Shown here: positions 27,749-32,706 of the stretch, one piece after another
How the letters are laid out: the number at the start of each line of letters is the position of its first letter
How positions within the stretch are numbered: the first letter of the stretch is position 1
NCBI GenBank assembly: GCA_900088475.1
Contig: FLMG01003843.1
Span: 1 to 47,461, forward strand
Reading direction: 5' to 3'
Length of the DNA stretch: 47,461 nucleotides
Source: Hyphochytrium catenoides
Lineage: Eukaryota; Protista; Hyphochytriomycota
The notes under the pieces: model-generated
What the model saw: only the letters and a program-made list of their open reading frames with translations
The model's database searches: none
Told to the model about the DNA's origin: nothing
Made by a program: the position numbers and the translations under genes

Positions 27749-27769
27749 TCTCTCTCCTCTCTCTCCCTG

Positions 27770-27802
<33 letters not shown>

Positions 27803-27830
27803 GTCTCTCTCTCTCGCGCGCGCGCGCGCG
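27749..27830. repeat. Compound microsatellite: imperfect (CT)n followed by (CG)8
   Basis: A ctctct... tract runs to 27814, followed by cgcgcgcgcgcgcgcg at 27815-27830. Confidence 0.95.
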
Positions 27831-28414
27831 TCAAACAGAAATCCTCCTCTCTGCTTTGGGCATGTCGTTCTGACAGGCGAAATCTTCACGCTCTTCGCTC
27901 TTAGTCACCATCATCCCTGATAAGGGGTCAACAGGTGGAGGTTATATAGAATGAGAATGCGCTTGTGCGGGTCGGTAACGGCTATCTCGCCCCTCTGATC
28001 TGATGAGATAACACGTAGGAAGAGCTTCAGAAGCTGAATCAAAGATTCAAGAGACAAGATCCAGCTCGGATCAAGGCTTCGACTCTCTTTGTGTAGAGGG
28101 TTCCTGAGCTCTCCCATCTATTGAACCGATCATCCTCGCTCAAACTCTATAAGATAGAGACTGCTGGACGTTATCTTTGATGAGAGACTGAGAATAACAT
28201 CGGCGGCTTGGGAAGGACAGATAAACATCCCCCAGTCGACATGAGCGCCGTGGAGAGATGACTGGACGAATGATGTGCCACAAGCTCTTACGCATTGTCT
28301 AGGCCAGTGTCCATATTGCAGATCTAGGCAATAAGGGCACCGCCACTTCTCAATGGCATCTTACTTCCTCAAACCCGGTTTCCAGGCTTCCAGTTCCCAA
28401 GAGTTTTAGATACG

Positions 28415-31283
28415 ATGGAGGTTTTAGTTTACAACGTGTCTCACAGTGATTTAATAGTCTCCTTGGCAGCTGAAGAGGATCAGCAGCGAGACGGTCCACA
28501 GCGGGAAGGCCTAGATGCCACCAGTTCCACCTCTACAGGTCCGTCTGCTCTTCTCTATGGCCCAGGTCACACTGGTCTCGTGAACCTTAGTAACACATAT
28601 ACTCCTTGGATCAGGGACTCGAGGATCCATCAATGAAGTTCTAAGCCATGAGATCCTTGCCAAGCCCAAATTTAGCTGCTTTCAACCCACTAGCGAGCGC
28701 ATTTTGGATGCGTTAGAGAGCCTATTGCTTAACGATGGTGTGAAGGAGGCTCTGGTCCCGGAATACTCGAGAGACTTTACAAGGCCCAACCTCAATCTAG
28801 TGCTAGCTTGCAGGACCTCCGGGATACCTGTGGGGTATGGGGCGTGTAGCCTGACATCTTCCCAGTGCCTTCACTTTGCTTACAACCTGTCCTGGCTACG
28901 TTTATAGCTTTCGACTAGATGCTAAACCTATTCCAGTACAGAGTGTGCACAACTTTCGGGTTCGCGGAGGATTTGAGGTGCGTGCGCTGGGGGGTGAAGA
29001 GAGCTCCAAAGCTAGTCTTGCTCATTCGTCCCGCAGACTCTTAAGCGTTTAGACGGCAGAAAGCTGGTAATCACAGGTGTTTACTTCCCCCTACTTTCTA
29101 TGCTGCTCCCAAAATGGACACAGATTCTGCATGAGGCAGGATCCTCGGGTAAGTTGAGTGTCTTGCCGCCCAGGTGACGGGACTATAGCTTTCTCTTCTC
29201 CTAACCATCCGTTGTCAGCAAGCAAGCGGGTTATATACCTCATAAGTGGCGCTGGGATACCTCGAAATCCCGAGCACTCTATGTACGACAACTCCACCAT
29301 TGGCACTGCTAAGATTATGCAGCACTTCATAGAGCTTTACCACCCAGGGGCTCGACCAATCCACCTCCACAGCGGATCGAATATCTTCACGTGAGCCTGA
29401 AAAACTCTTGTTGATGATCTAGTATGTCAACACCGGCTAAAATAGGCTCCTTGCTGCTCGATTGTATCGGTAGCTTTGATGATAATGTCCACTTTGTCAA
29501 CAACTCGCTTAGAGCGGCTCTGGAGCGGCAACGAGCGGAGATTGCGGATAACTGTGAGGGGGACTGGATCAACAGGTGAGTAGGGCTTCGACACGGGGTT
29601 GCCGGTGCTCTTTGAAAAGGGTTAAGCTCGTCTCCTTATTGCTACTTGCCATCCTATTTGCCCCTTTCGTTGTCGTGTCAAATGTTCCTTGCGGCACAAG
29701 TCCTGCGGCGGCTTCACGTAATGTTATTCTACTCCTGGGAAGGAATAGAACTTATTACCTCTCTCTGTCACCTCCTGAGTTCTCCGGCCTACTGGTGGTA
29801 CCTATGGCATCATTCCGCGGTACTTAACATGGCCCTCTGTTTCTCTTGTGCTTAGGTTTCATGTAACCATTGCAATTGGTGACGGGGCTCCCGCTCGTCT
29901 GGTGGCGATTAATGCCAGCCTTCGACACTATTGCCCATCTTATCTCCATATCTGGCAGGTAAGTTTATCAGAGTTGGCCACTTAATGGAAAAAGCCTCTG
30001 GACTAGTAAACCATTGGTGGCCAAGCCTACGGCCCCATGCCATGGTTGCCTAGCGATGTTCTATTCTTACCTCTACTCTACTCCGCCCTCTATTGTGAGG
30101 AACCCAGTTCCGCCTTATTGTCTATTTGGCCTAGCTATTGTTTAGTTTCCCGGCAATCATTGATCTGACGACACGATGCACAGCTCAAAACCTTCTGGCA
30201 CGAGCAGAAGATATCAATGGAGGACATTGAGTTTCATAATTTTGCTAGCATTGAGTCATCTCCTGCCATGGAGGTCCATAAACTGGACGATATGGCTAGG
30301 ATGGTTGTGGCTGAAGTTATCCGACGGCGGGACCTGTTTCAGGACTCATTGAAGAACGGAAACGAGCTGGCAGAGTTCTGGCTCCGGAAGAGCAAAAAAC
30401 CTGTTATTGCGGTGCTCGCTGTGCAGAAAGACCCACATGAGGAGCCCAAACTCTATTGTGGGACCAATCTGGAGGTCTCTATGCCCACTGGTAAGCTGAA
30501 AAGGCAGGTGGTGTTGGTGCCTCTTAAACTAGATGCTATGAGGTATAAGTTCGACATCTAGACGTCAAAAGGGACATCGAGGGACAATTGGGGATGGTCC
30601 AAAAGGAGTCTGAAAGGAGTCTGACACACCGTCACCCAATCAAATTGCACCTCGTAAGGATCGCTATGTGCGGAGAGAAACGTCATTGGTAACGCGCTAG
30701 CCAACGACCTAACCCTCCGAAGACGTGACCTGAAGATGGTGGCAGTAATGAGCTTAGCGATGCCCAGTAAGCCACTTCCTATGGCAAGGTCCTCTGCCCC
30801 TCCGAAGTTGGTAGACGCCAAAGATATGCCTCCCCCTACGGCGGCTATCATACACAGGACCACGACCACCCAAGGGGGAATGGAAGCTCCTGAGATGCTA
30901 CGGTTCATAGAAAGGAAGCTCGCAGAGCCACGTCCCACGAAGATTGTTATTGACACTGCCAGCACTCCAGGTCTGGTTATTGCCTCCTATCTGTAAGGCT
31001 TCTCTGGGTTGACTCAGGTCCCTCTGTTTTCCTTCCCCCAGACTACGGCTCTTCGGCTCCATCCTCGCCAGGCTCAGCAGCACAAAGACAAAAGAAAAAG
31101 CGCCCTCGGACATACAGTGTTGACGAGAAAGTTCTGGTAGAAGAGGGAGATAGGAACCCATTGCCTCCATGTGGCGCGTGCAAGGAATGGTTGAAGAAGA
31201 TTGCGGAGGTGAATCCTACTTTTAGAGTACTCACATTCACCGATATGCAATGTAGTGGAGTGTACGTTAATTTAGTTCTTTAG
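28415..31283 (+). CDS. CDA/CDD-fold zinc deaminase with large N-terminal alpha/beta domain (resembles the LmjF36.5940-like protist deaminase family), about 10 exons
   Basis: The C-terminal part reads EFWLRKSKKPVIAVLAV..GTNLEVSMPT|GSLCAERNVIGNAL...NPLPPCGACKEWLKKIAEVNPTFRVLTF, giving an intact CAE and PCxxC zinc site. Upstream exons splice in frame from MEVLVYNVSHSDL. The family name comes from recall, not from a search. Confidence 0.85.
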
Positions 31284-31380: not shown

Positions 31381-32706
31381 CTACCTACAGTCGCTGTCAA
31401 GCATTGCGACTGGAACTGAGGGGCGACGACAGCCTGGGTACTTCGTTTCCGGTACCTCCACTTGGATGGTGGTGTGGCTTAATCCATGCTGCTTAAGGTA
31501 AGTCTGGGCTTCCACCAAACAAGTATCGGGATCATTGCTAACCAAGTGCACGCTGAGGGAAGCTTTGCCCACTGTCAGAGACCAGACGTGCATATGATGT
31601 AGGTCAATTACGCTAGGTAGTGCTCTTAGACCTTCCTTGAGCTCTTCTGGATCCAAACCTTCCGGAACCCCTTCCATCAGCACATGAACACTGCGTCTCA
31701 CGATATCGATAGTTGAAAATAGCACCAGAACGGAAAAGAGGAACGTAGCTATGGGGTCAGCCAGCTGCCACCGTGGATTATACCAGATAAGCCCGCCTGC
31801 GACACAGACACCCACGCTTTGAATCAGATCCCCAAGTGCGTGGATGTACGCAGCTTCTACATTCAGGTTCTTAGCTCTTTTCTTAGCCTGACCGGGGTTA
31901 GAGGTCTCTTTAAGGTGGGCTGAGCCTTTTTCCTCATCTTCCTCATCACTGCTATGGTCGTGAGAATGATCGTGAGAATGACCATCGTGATGTGAGCCAT
32001 GCGAATGCTCATTTCCTAGTCCTTCCCTCTTCTTGCTATCATTTTTGCCGTGGGAATGGGCGTGGCTTCCATGAGAATGACCATGATCGCCACCCGGGCC
32101 ATGACTGTGACCATGGCCCAGAATGCCCATAAGAATGAGGTTGATGAGAAGCCCTAATGCCGCTACGAAGAACATCAACCTTCCATCGACATGCTCCTTA
32201 GGGTTGTCGGAGAGAATATCTGCGGTTCGTAGGACTGCTTCATAGAACAATACGCCTGTCATTAGCCAGATAACCTAAGCATGTAAAGCAGGGCAATGTA
32301 AGAGTCAGGGTGGAAGAAGAGGTTGATTTCCAGCTTGTTTATGCGATATTCTTACCAAGACGCTAATAAGCGCTCCTAAAATCTCAGCCCTGTGAAACCC
32401 GAAAGAGAGCTTGGAAGTAGCAGGCAAACTGGTCATCCATATAGCAAAAATACTGATCAGAAAGCCCGCCACGTCCGAAAGTAGATGCGCGGCATCAGTC
32501 ATGACCGCAAGACTGTTAGCGAGATAACCGCCAACAATCTCAGCTATCATGAAGACACAGCTAAAGATAGTGGCTTTCAGGAGCCTGTTTCTAGCCATTC
32601 GGGACTCTTCTGATAGCTTGAAGCGCTTTCCAGAGCCATCCTTGGTGCGAAGCAATGGAGATTGCTCTGTAAACCCATGGCAAGCCTCTTTTGTATCTAC
32701 CGCCAT
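31381..32706 (-). CDS. Cation diffusion facilitator zinc transporter (ZnT/MTP1-like), 2 exons
   Basis: Motifs: FMIAEIVGGYLANSLAVMTDAAHLLSD, SFGFHRAEILGAL, a His-rich cytosolic loop, NLNVEAAYIHALGDLIQSVGV, ADPIATF, HHMHVWSLT, HTTIQVE. Confidence 0.95.

What the first reader, a model, noticed from the sequence alone, without database searches (positions are those of the whole stretch)
28415..31283. Eukaryotic deaminase whose N-terminal domain looks CARF-like: candidate nucleotide-signal-activated editing or defence enzyme
Exons at about 29219-29958 encode KRVIYLISGAG..NSTIGTAKIMQHFIELYHPGARPIHLHSGSNIFTFDDNVHFVNNSLRAALERQ..FHVTIAIGDGAPARLVAINASLRHYCPSYLHIWQ. The strand/helix order is Rossmann-like. 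The strand-GDGAPAR-helix-strand segment, preceded by FDD and a helix, parallels the Csm6-type CARF segment (DFD, helix, LNLSSGTPAM..AL). It is fused to a CDA-fold domain with intact CAE and PCGAC zinc ligands. CARF-effector fusions are cyclic-oligoadenylate-activated immune effectors in prokaryotes. From recall, this protist deaminase family has been described only as having an uncharacterised Rossmann-fold domain, with unknown substrate. The CARF assignment is my pattern-based inference.
Basis: partly seen in the sequence, partly recalled or inferred. Interest (0 to 1): 0.78.

Follow-up and report, generated by a model that had tools for sequence, protein, structure and literature searches.

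The report
Eukaryotic CARF-sensor cytidine-type deaminase gene
A protist gene encodes a zinc deaminase fused to a sensor domain of the CARF type, so far known only from bacterial CRISPR immunity, and its bacterial relatives sit beside type III CRISPR genes, which suggests a microbial eukaryote kept a bacterial signal-gated immune enzyme.

Summary
Window 28415-31283 (+) holds an intact 10-exon gene of 511 codons, with GT-AG at every intron. Its last three exons match Pfam PF14421 (LmjF36.5940-like CDD/CDA deaminase) and keep CAE and PCGAC.

- The sensor module starts at the first exon (strand 1, YNVSHSD) and carries a roughly 150-residue insert.
- An AlphaFold model of the whole module was made on the Albugo orthologue, because exons were not joined. 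Its 19 best matches among 48,161 PDB chains are all CARF proteins (Z 13.0-8.3). The first non-CARF chain ties the weakest of them at 8.3.
- Bacterial homologues with the same architecture in one ORF lie next to type III CRISPR-Cas genes, or a Csm6-like gene, in 7 of 19 loci. One sits directly downstream of a GGDD Cas10 and RAMP genes.
- Eukaryotic members form one clan, nearest to CRISPR-linked bacterial members.

No held paper describes a CARF-CDA effector or a eukaryotic CARF. Makarova 2014 reported finding none in eukaryotes. Ligand, substrate and oligomer state are untested. The pocket motifs differ between bacteria and eukaryotes, so the eukaryotic ligand may differ. The scan had not noted this before.

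The parts
28415..28538 (+). Exon 1: start codon, CARF strand 1 and motif I (MEVLVYNVSHSDLIV; YNVSHSD at 28430-28450)
   Evidence: It matches the N-terminus of P0009/P0002 (MEFLVHNISHSDLIV) and of the bacterial ORFs (LLVHNVGHHD). It hits profile A3 at positions 2-27, E 2.5e-9. In the model this strand has pLDDT about 97 and aligns to residues 1-3 onward of CARF chains.
28639..28834 (+). Exon 2: first part of the insert subdomain between CARF strand 1 and helix 1 (..EILAKPKFSCFQ..)
   Evidence: Profile A3 positions 29-86, E 1.7e-7. tblastn with P0009 residues 43-70 hits here.
28908..28977 (+). Exon 3: insert subdomain, continued (FRLDAKPIPVQSVHNFRVRGGFE)
   Evidence: Weak but collinear profile match at positions 89-110. 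The tblastn hit of P0009 residues 124-242 spans it. GT-AG borders.
29037..29148 (+). Exon 4: end of the insert and CARF helix 1 (VYFPLLSMLLPKW)
   Evidence: Profile A3 positions 122-149, E 2.1e-8. The conserved FPLL..LLP.W helix is seen in A1/A3.
29219..29390 (+). Exon 5: CARF strand 2 (RVIYLISGAG), NST helix cap, strand 3 (IHLHSG)
   Evidence: Profile A3 positions 154-209, E 1.5e-19. 52-55% identical to the oomycete proteins.
29474..29575 (+). Exon 6: FDDN motif and the long helix before strand 4
   Evidence: Profile A3 positions 211-241, E 2.1e-6.
29856..29958 (+). Exon 7: CARF strand 4, motif II (GDGAPAR at 29878-29898), helix, strand 5 (YLHIWQ)
   Evidence: Profile A3 positions 245-278, E 2.2e-15. 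hhalign places this motif on CARF motif II of Csm6, Can1 and a TIGR02710 CARF protein.
30184..30490 (+). Exon 8: last CARF strand (LKTFWHE..DIEFHNF), linker, and start of the deaminase (..FWLRKSKKPVIAVL..YCGTNLEVSMPTG)
   Evidence: Profile A3 positions 279-309. PF14421, 47.1 bits.
30659..30766 (+). Exon 9: deaminase catalytic helix SLCAERNVIG (CAE at 30667-30675)
   Evidence: PF14421, 54.9 bits. It aligns to the CAER of human CDA through the family profile.
31042..31283 (+). Exon 10: low-complexity insert, PCGAC zinc ligands (31167-31181), C-terminus and stop codon
   Evidence: PF14421, 72.7 bits. 485 library proteins at E<=0.001 with this exon as query.

Best explanation
The gene encodes a two-module protein.

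Module 1 covers exons 1-8 and is about 330 residues. It is a CARF-type Rossmann-like sensor domain. Its first strand is at the very N-terminus, and a conserved insert of about 150 residues follows before helix 1.

Module 2 covers exons 8-10. It is a CDD/CDA-clade zinc deaminase of the LmjF36.5940-like family, with the catalytic Glu and all Cys ligands intact.

The family arose among bacterial type III CRISPR-Cas ancillary effectors and passed once into eukaryotes, where stramenopiles kept it.

Likely mechanism (inferred). A small nucleotide-derived ligand binds the conserved pocket at the C-terminal edge of the CARF sheet, formed by motif I (SHSD) and motif II (DGxPAR) and probably lying across a dimer axis. 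Binding switches on the deaminase, which converts a free cytosine nucleoside or nucleotide to the uracil form. This parallels CARF-adenosine deaminase Cad1, which converts ATP to ITP.

In the CRISPR-linked bacterial relatives the ligand is most likely a Cas10-made cyclic oligoadenylate. In the eukaryote the ligand and its producer are unknown and may have changed.

Shown: gene structure, deaminase family, CARF fold, CRISPR linkage of the bacterial kin, and a single eukaryotic clan.
Inferred: ligand gating, substrate, dimer, direction of transfer.

My odds: CARF homology about 0.85; ligand-gated deaminase in the bacterial kin about 0.6; still ligand-gated in this protist about 0.4.
For: - Deaminase: PF14421 on three exons. 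The closest solved relatives are the human and mouse tetrameric cytidine deaminases, with the N-x-E and CAER motifs aligned.
- CARF fold: the truncated model already drew only CARF proteins in the top 46 rows of the re-alignment (Z up to 8.8) and CARF, RtcR or Csm6 clusters in the ESM Atlas (TM 0.54-0.63). I predicted that the conserved N-terminal strand is the missing CARF strand 1. The full model confirmed it: Z rose to 13.0 (Can2 8q3y), 13.0 (VC1899 1xmx) and 12.9 (Card1 6wxw, rmsd 2.8 A over 132 residues). The aligned chain ranges now start at residues 1-3, the top 19 rows are all CARF, and the first non-CARF row has Z 8.3. Foldseek's top 8 are also CARF (prob 0.97-1.00).
- Motif II: hhalign of the bacterial profile against Can1, Csm6 and a TIGR02710 CARF protein of pTT27 lands each time on their SGT(K/T)AM motif (P 0.0044, 0.0033, 0.037).
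- Conservation: residues conserved across bacteria and eukaryotes cluster in motif I (H6, N7, H10, D12) and around motif II (G287, A290).
- Context: L020 has a GGDD Cas10 and three RAMP genes, one of which passes the TIGR03986 cut-off, directly upstream on the same strand. L017 has Cas6, Cas2, RT-PrimPol, Cas1 and a 38-nt repeat array. L053 has Cmr2-3-1-4-5. L051 has Cas6, RT and a 39-copy array. L063 has Cas1, RT and Cas6. L050 has three RAMP genes. L002 has a Csm6-like neighbour. That makes 7 of 19 loci with usable flanks.
- Trees: eukaryotes form one clan (SH-aLRT 100), next to L001, L002 and L009.
Against: - No sequence profile links the module to CARF. There was no Pfam CARF hit for 35 members even at E 10 and no PDB sequence hit. 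hhalign probabilities are low (0.2-10%).
- The structure is a prediction for an orthologue that is 39-76% identical to the window's exons 5-10 exon by exon, not for the window's protein.
- The window's motif II, D-G-A-P-A-R, is one residue shorter than [DN]x[ST]xxx[RK] and has Ala where Ser or Thr is usual.
- Twelve of the 19 bacterial loci show no cas gene within 10 kb.
- Eukaryotes have no Cas10. The pocket motifs changed between bacteria (GHHD, STGT..M) and eukaryotes (SH[ST]D, DGSPAR) along a long branch, so cOA sensing may be lost.
- The very strong conservation of His, Asn and Asp residues could mean catalysis rather than sensing.
- The trees are unrooted and have long bacterial branches.
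Confidence: 0.55

Rival explanations
1. The module is CARF-derived but no longer a signal receiver in eukaryotes. It serves as an oligomerisation scaffold or as an allosteric site for ordinary (d)NTPs, as in dCMP deaminase regulation, in a housekeeping pyrimidine salvage deaminase.
For: The family is kept across stramenopiles as one clan, which looks like vertical descent. The pocket motifs were remodelled relative to the bacteria. An 11-member Myxococcota clade (10 distinct loci) shows no CRISPR link where flanks could be read. The deaminase is closest to free-nucleoside CDAs.
Against: The pocket residues are near-invariant across 35-70 members, more than a scaffold needs. The eukaryotes' nearest bacterial kin are CRISPR-linked.
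Confidence: 0.27
2. It is an RNA- or DNA-editing (mutator) deaminase, as Iyer et al. 2011 suggested for the family. The CARF-like module would bind nucleic-acid ends, such as 2',3'-cyclic-phosphate tRNA fragments as in RtcR, rather than a diffusible messenger.
For: Iyer 2011 (PMC3239186) proposed mRNA editing or DNA mutagenesis for the clade. RtcR-family clusters are among the Atlas structural neighbours. Like RtcR and Can1, the bacterial members lack the Lys/Arg after motif II.
Against: The Asn and Glu of the CDA N-x-E motif are retained (NLEVS), and the closest solved relatives are nucleoside CDAs. From my knowledge of CDA structures, that motif contacts the ribose. The best structural matches are cOA-binding Can2, Card1 and Csm6 rather than RtcR. 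The CCCH zinc fingers behind the editing idea occur only in the kinetoplastid members.
Confidence: 0.1
3. The N-terminal module is an enzyme in its own right, for example a ring-nuclease-like phosphodiesterase that uses the invariant His/Asn/Asp of HN-x-SH-x-D. It would process a nucleotide that the deaminase then acts on, as a two-step pathway.
For: Motif I conservation is unusually strong and rich in His (H6, N7, H10, D12), with further HS and H308 positions. Among the best structural matches are the ring nucleases Sis0811 and Sso2081.
Against: Many CARF sensors also degrade their ligand, so this does not exclude sensing. There is no metal or nucleophile signature I can tie to a known phosphodiesterase, and no coordinates were available to check the geometry.
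Confidence: 0.1
4. The resemblance to CARF is convergent, and the module is a generic Rossmann-like (HUP/USP-, SLOG- or SDR-like) domain of unrelated origin.
For: No sequence-level detection. The truncated model gave only middling scores (Z 8.3-8.8), with USP and KCC C-terminal domains at Z 6-7.3. Language-model features of exon 5 pointed to SDR-like Rossmann proteins.
Against: With strand 1 included, CARF chains stand up to 4.7 Z units above every other fold, and 19 of the top 19 rows are CARF. The motif II register agrees in six hhalign runs. Linkage to type III CRISPR is exactly what is expected of a CARF effector.
Confidence: 0.07

Closest known systems
Cad1 / CAAD (CARF-adenosine deaminase of type III CRISPR-Cas)
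   Same: An N-terminal CARF sensor fused to a C-terminal nucleotide deaminase. The bacterial relatives are encoded in type III CRISPR-Cas loci. The Cad1 CARF domain matches the model at Z 10.7 (9c68) and 9.8 (8z3k).
   Different: From what I know of these families, Cad1's catalytic domain is an adenosine-deaminase-type (amidohydrolase) fold acting on ATP. Here it is a CDA-fold zinc deaminase (CAE/PCxxC; PF14421). This CARF has a 150-residue insert after strand 1, and this family has a large eukaryotic branch.
Can2 / Card1 / VC1899 CARF domains
   Same: The best structural matches: Z 13.0, 13.0, 12.9 and 12.8, rmsd 2.3-3.5 A, covering the whole CARF domain from residues 1-3 to about 140.
   Different: By their PDB titles these are CRISPR nucleases, not deaminases. 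Sequence identity is only 9-11%. I could not test whether their cA4-contacting residues are conserved.
LmjF36.5940-like CDD/CDA deaminases (Pfam PF14421; Iyer et al. 2011, PMC3239186)
   Same: The window's protein is a member. Three exons pass the gathering score, and it has the N-terminal 'Rossmann fold domain' noted for the stramenopile and chlorophyte versions.
   Different: That paper left the N-terminal domain uncharacterised and proposed editing. The CARF identity and the type III CRISPR linkage of the bacterial members are not in it.
Homotetrameric cytidine deaminase (human CDA 1MQ0, mouse 1ZAB)
   Same: The closest solved sequences to the catalytic domain (E 1.4e-6). The N-x-E, CAER and PCGAC motifs align.
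   Different: CDA is a 140-residue stand-alone enzyme. Here there is a CARF module in front, and in eukaryotes a long low-complexity insert before PCGAC.
RtcR CARF domain
   Same: It is a CARF outside CRISPR loci that lacks the basic residue after strand 4, like the bacterial members here. RtcR clusters are among the Atlas neighbours (TM 0.54-0.57).
   Different: RtcR is a sigma-54 transcription activator, and it is a weaker structural match than Can2 or Card1.

Membership tests
CARF superfamily | Six-stranded Rossmann-like core with a strand 5-6 hairpin; closest structures are CARF domains | tested here: met
   The model of the orthologue P0009:1-343 (pLDDT 86.1) has top 19 PDB rows that are all CARF, Z 13.0-8.3, with the best non-CARF row at 8.3. 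Foldseek, the re-alignment and the Atlas agree. This was tested on an orthologue, not on the window's joined protein.
CARF superfamily | Polar, usually Ser/Thr, residue at the end of strand 1 (Makarova 2014, PMC4012209) | tested here: met
   The window has VLVYNV-S-H-S-D. The family has [SG]H[HST][DE], with H10 invariant in 70 sequences. Whether these residues superpose on the Ser of ring nucleases could not be checked residue by residue.
CARF superfamily | [DN]x[ST]xxx[RK] signature just after strand 4 | tested here: inconclusive
   The window has D-G-A-P-A-R (family consensus D-G-S-P-A-R). This is one residue shorter, with Ala for Ser/Thr. Bacterial members have S-T-G-T-x-x-M without Lys/Arg, like Can1. 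hhalign aligns the motif to the SGT(K/T)AM of three CARF proteins in the same register (P 0.003-0.28).
CARF superfamily | Detectable by CARF sequence profiles (Pfam/NCBIfam CARF families) | tested here: not met
   None of the 35 members hit a CARF Pfam family at E<=10. There were no hits in PDB sequences. NCBIfam gave only cytidine deaminase hits for L020.
CARF superfamily | Genomic association with type III CRISPR-Cas (for effector-type CARFs) | tested here: met
   Seven of 19 bacterial-type loci with usable flanks carry Cas10, RAMP, Cmr, Cas6, Cas1 or Csm6 genes or arrays within 10 kb. This does not apply to the eukaryotic gene itself.
CARF superfamily | Homodimer with the ligand pocket on the two-fold axis; binds cyclic oligoadenylate | not testable with these tools
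   Only monomer prediction was on offer, no coordinates are returned, and there is no ligand docking or biochemistry.
LmjF36.5940-like CDD/CDA deaminase (PF14421) | Profile match above the gathering score | tested here: met
   Exons 8, 9 and 10 score 47.1, 54.9 and 72.7 bits against a cut-off of 27.1. Full-length homologues score 180-210 bits.
LmjF36.5940-like CDD/CDA deaminase (PF14421) | C[H]AE in helix 2 and PCxxC in helix 3 (Iyer 2011) | tested here: met
   SLCAERNVIG at 30661-30690 and PPCGACKEW from 31164. Both motifs are invariant in A2 and A5.
Cad1-type CARF-adenosine deaminase | Adenosine-deaminase (amidohydrolase) catalytic domain | tested here: not met
   The catalytic domain is CDA-fold (PF14421), and its nearest solved relatives are cytidine deaminases. 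It works like Cad1 in architecture but is not a member.

The most novel reading that the evidence does not exclude
This would be the first CARF-domain receptor in eukaryotes: a type III CRISPR ancillary effector taken up by an early stramenopile and kept as a messenger-gated cytosine-nucleotide deaminase. That would imply microbial eukaryotes run an oligoadenylate-like second-messenger pathway that ends on a CARF sensor, with a non-Cas10 producer. Unchecked notes of this scan mention OAS-type synthases in the same genome. It would also mean bacteria have an undescribed class of cOA-activated CDA-fold effectors.
Probability: 0.3. Interest if true: 0.92.

Novelty: new variant of a known kind. 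Interest (0 to 1): 0.8.

Why it matters
CARF sensors are the receivers of type III CRISPR second messengers. Makarova et al. 2014 reported that extensive searches failed to find CARF in eukaryotes. Here a CARF-fold module sits in a protein family present in oomycetes, diatoms, brown algae and other stramenopiles.

Three things follow.
- It gives the 'uncharacterised Rossmann domain' of the LmjF36.5940-like deaminases (Iyer 2011) a concrete, testable role.
- It points to an undescribed bacterial effector class, CARF plus a CDA-fold deaminase, alongside the adenosine deaminase Cad1. A 2024 survey of type III effectors mentions no deaminase.
- It adds a candidate to the list of prokaryote-derived immune modules in eukaryotes and poses a sharp question: what ligand, made by which enzyme, does a eukaryotic CARF sense?

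The bacterial loci with an adjacent GGDD Cas10 offer a direct experimental route.

Tried and rejected
- SLOG/LOG hypothesis. I first suspected this from the SGxG and DGxxAR motifs. No LOG or SLOG chain appears among the top 50 structural matches, so I dropped it.
- SDR-like Rossmann. The Atlas language-model neighbours of exon 5 alone pointed this way. It is only a generic strand-Gly-rich-loop signal, and the fold searches do not support it.
- Pfam, NCBIfam and PDB sequence searches of the N-module gave nothing relevant. The weak AraC_binding, 2'-5' RNA ligase and roadblock hits are noise.
Adding the N-terminal strand and the insert resolved this.
- hhalign against single CARF sequences gave low probabilities. 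I use it only for the register of motif II.
- Makarova 2020 (CARF classification) is not held, so I cannot exclude that a CARF-CDA family is listed there.
All window searches were exon by exon by reference, and the structure work used database orthologues.
- The window's own protein was not among the proteins returned (best about 50-55% identity).
- The search for a cyclase in this genome was limited to earlier notes.
Full report
GENE AND OBSERVATION

The region 28415-31283 (+) holds one gene, for which I derived a 10-exon model: 28415-28538, 28639-28834, 28908-28977, 29037-29148, 29219-29390, 29474-29575, 29856-29958, 30184-30490, 30659-30766 and 31042-31283. All introns are GT-AG. The coding total is 1536 nt, in frame, which gives 511 codons plus the stop.

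Each exon was translated and searched on its own. CAE lies at 30667-30675 and PCGAC at 31167-31181.

The exon order is supported by collinear matches to full-length homologues. For P0009, exons 5-10 map to residues 187-242, 244-274, 278-311, 312-415, 417-450 and 520-594. Exons 1-8 also match a profile of the family's N-terminal module collinearly.

The organism is an intron-rich stramenopile-like protist. Its closest proteins are oomycete ones at about 50-55% identity, and its own protein was not among those returned.

DEAMINASE MODULE

Exons 8, 9 and 10 each pass the gathering score of Pfam PF14421, the LmjF36.5940-like CDD/CDA deaminase family. Iyer et al. 2011 (PMC3239186) defined this clade. 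[quoted passage not shown]

The family profile's closest solved sequences are the human and mouse homotetrameric cytidine deaminases, with the N-x-E, CAER and PCGAC motifs aligned. From what is known of CDA structures, this favours a free nucleoside or nucleotide substrate. That step is inference.

THE N-TERMINAL MODULE IS A CARF DOMAIN

Sequence searches gave nothing. There was no Pfam family and no PDB sequence hit.

- Foldseek's top rows were CARF proteins, but only at weak E-values.
- An exhaustive VIA-align scan put CARF chains in 13 of the top 16 rows, at a middling Z of up to 8.3.
- In the re-alignment of Foldseek's list, the first 46 rows were all CARF proteins or the related SAVED, with Z up to 8.8.
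- The ESM Atlas gave a bacterial PF14421 cluster first, followed by Cas02710, Card1-CARF, Csm6 and RtcR clusters.

In these alignments the CARF chains started at about residue 13. Their first strand had no partner in my model.

Bacterial homologues found in GTDB genomes all begin with LLVHN[IV]GHHD, and 99 eukaryotic proteins carry E[IL]LVHN[VI]SH[ST]D. The window's exon 1 starts MEVLVYNVSHSDLIV. I therefore predicted that this N-terminal strand is CARF strand 1, followed by an insert.

The model of P0009:1-343 (70 sequences, pLDDT 86.1, pTM 0.85) confirmed the prediction.
- Z rose to 13.0 (Can2 8q3y), 13.0 (VC1899 1xmx), 12.9 (Card1 6wxw; rmsd 2.8 A over 132 residues) and 12.8 (Can2 8bao; rmsd 2.3 A).
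- The aligned chain ranges now start at residues 1-3.
- The top 19 rows are all CARF proteins, including the Cad1 CARF domain at Z 10.7.
- The first non-CARF chain is at Z 8.3.
- Foldseek's top 8 are CARF with probability 0.97-1.00.

MOTIFS

Makarova et al. 2014 define CARF by two features: a polar Ser/Thr at the end of strand 1, and [DN]x[ST]xxx[RK] after strand 4.
- Strand 1 here ends in S-H-S-D. In the family this is [SG]H[HST][DE], with the His invariant.
- After strand 4 the window has G-D-G-A-P-A-R, against a eukaryotic consensus of ADGSPAR. The bacterial members have LS-x-S-T-G-T-x-x-M.
- I fetched three real CARF proteins from T. thermophilus pTT27: Csm6, Can1 and a TIGR02710 CARF protein. 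In six hhalign runs the best local alignment always placed the family's motif on their DLTSGTKAM, NLNSGTTAM or DLTGGTKPM motif. P values were 0.0033, 0.0044 and 0.037 with the bacterial profile.

The probabilities are low, so this supports the register, not homology on its own. The residues conserved from bacteria to eukaryotes sit in motif I and around motif II, at the C-terminal edge of the sheet, which is the usual ligand site.

The window departs from the family consensus in two places. It has Y for the usual H in LVHN, as a few diatom proteins do, and FTFDDN for FRYDEN.

BACTERIAL RELATIVES AND THEIR CONTEXT

Sixteen GTDB loci and 12 bacterial-type metagenome loci encode the whole architecture in one ORF. 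The bacterial type has EVSLPTG and the eukaryotic type EVSMPTG. Seven of the 19 loci with usable flanks carry type III CRISPR-Cas components:

| Locus | Neighbouring CRISPR-Cas features |
|---|---|
| L020 (=L003) | Gene lies directly downstream, same strand, of a 510-residue Cas10-palm protein with an intact GGDD motif and three large RAMP proteins, one passing the TIGR03986 cut-off |
| L017 (=L009) | Cas6, Cas2, RT-PrimPol and Cas1, plus two identical 38-nt repeats ending GTTGAAACA at the contig end |
| L053 | Cmr2-Cmr3-Cmr1-Cmr4-Cmr5 and an array |
| L051 | Cas6, RT and a 39-copy array |
| L063 | Cas1, RT and Cas6 |
| L050 | Three RAMP genes around a 987-residue gene |
| L002 | A Csm6-like CARF-HEPN gene immediately downstream |

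L025 lies beside Wadjet (JetD) and a Schlafen/AlbA_2 gene. The other 11 loci show no cas gene within 10 kb. A cas locus covers only a small part of a genome, so this level of adjacency is far above chance.

PHYLOGENY

In two trees the eukaryotic sequences form one clan (SH-aLRT 100). A split at 98-99 groups L001, L002 and L009 with them. CRISPR-linked members fall on both sides of the midpoint root. An 11-member Myxococcota clade (10 distinct loci) shows no cas gene where flanks could be read.

The trees are unrooted and the bacterial branches are long. Transfer from bacteria to an early stramenopile is therefore the parsimonious reading, since CARF and type III systems are prokaryotic, but it is not a demonstrated one.

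MECHANISM

Shown: an intact gene, a CDA-fold catalytic domain with all catalytic residues, a CARF-fold N-module, and CRISPR linkage of the bacterial kin.

Inferred: by analogy with Cad1 and other CARF effectors, ligand binding to the CARF pocket activates the deaminase. This probably happens in a dimer or higher oligomer, since CDAs are tetramers. The deaminase then depletes or converts a cytosine nucleotide.

In the eukaryote the ligand is unknown. The pocket motifs differ from the bacterial ones (GHHD to SH[ST]D, and STGT..M to DGSPAR), and there is no Cas10. A changed ligand, an allosteric (d)NTP site or a catalytic role of the module are live rivals. Unchecked notes of this scan mention OAS-type nucleotidyltransferases elsewhere in this genome. 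I could not examine them.

NOVELTY

Makarova 2014 states that CARF was not found in eukaryotes. Searches of the held literature found no CARF-cytidine-deaminase effector and no eukaryotic CARF. A 2024 survey of type III effectors does not mention deaminases. Makarova 2020 is not held, so prior listing of the bacterial family cannot be excluded.

The protein family itself is known (Pfam, Iyer 2011). What is new is the identity of its N-domain, the CRISPR link and the eukaryotic CARF.

VERDICT

The CARF reading is supported, with corrected domain limits. The functional claim is plausible but untested. This is a new variant of a known kind, with interest 0.8.

Noticed in passing
window 31381-32706 (-): A cation-diffusion-facilitator (ZnT-type) zinc transporter gene with a long His-rich loop (HGHSHG...), in at least two exons. 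It is tail-to-tail with the deaminase gene, and the two stop codons are about 100 bp apart (Cation_efflux and ZT_dimer).
   Followed up: partly
window about 27760-27840: A CT/GA dinucleotide microsatellite about 600 bp upstream of the deaminase start codon. It reads as SLSLSL / ERERER in the ORF list.
   Followed up: no
L033:6678-7505 (-) and L034:6547-7374 (-): A Bd3614-type deaminase gene (PF14439) lies about 5 kb from the CARF-deaminase gene in a Myxococcota MAG. Iyer 2011 notes both families as shared between Bdellovibrio-like bacteria and algae.
   Followed up: no
L025:947-9731: The bacterial homologue L004 sits beside a Wadjet-like set (JetD_C) and a Schlafen/AlbA_2-HATPase gene. This is a defence island without cas genes.
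   Followed up: no
L017:899-7403: In the island with the CRISPR-linked homologue there is a LOG/SLOG-like gene (LDcluster4), an AAA_16 STAND-like ATPase and a PD-(D/E)xK-FtsK fusion.
   Followed up: no
L020:939-2471: The Cas10-like protein upstream of the homologue has only 510 residues. Its single Pfam hit is Cas10-Cmr2_palm2 and it keeps GGDD (IVLGGDDY). The adjacent RAMP proteins are large fusions with partial similarity to gRAMP/Cas7-11, so this may be an unusual type III subtype.
   Followed up: partly
L021:9489-9854 (-), L027:7382-7747 (-): A conserved 121-residue MazG-like gene lies divergently upstream of the homologue in two related Myxococcales genomes. This may be mere synteny or a nucleotide-pyrophosphatase partner.
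   Followed up: no
P0190 (385 aa): A database protein combines TruB_N/TruB_C/PUA (Cbf5-like pseudouridine synthase) with a piece matching the family's N-module (E 6e-11, 30% coverage). It is probably a merged gene call on a short contig.
   Followed up: partly
P0043, P0096, P0116 and other diatom proteins: Diatom and other ochrophyte members carry 150-360 extra residues before CARF strand 1, and long low-complexity inserts inside the deaminase. No Pfam domain was seen in those extensions.
   Followed up: no
window 28430-28432 and 29389-29390 + 29474: The window's protein has Tyr where 90% or more of family members have His (LVHN to LVYN). It also has Thr for the near-invariant Arg of FRYDEN, encoded by the codon split between exons 5 and 6. 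These could tune or weaken the pocket.
   Followed up: partly
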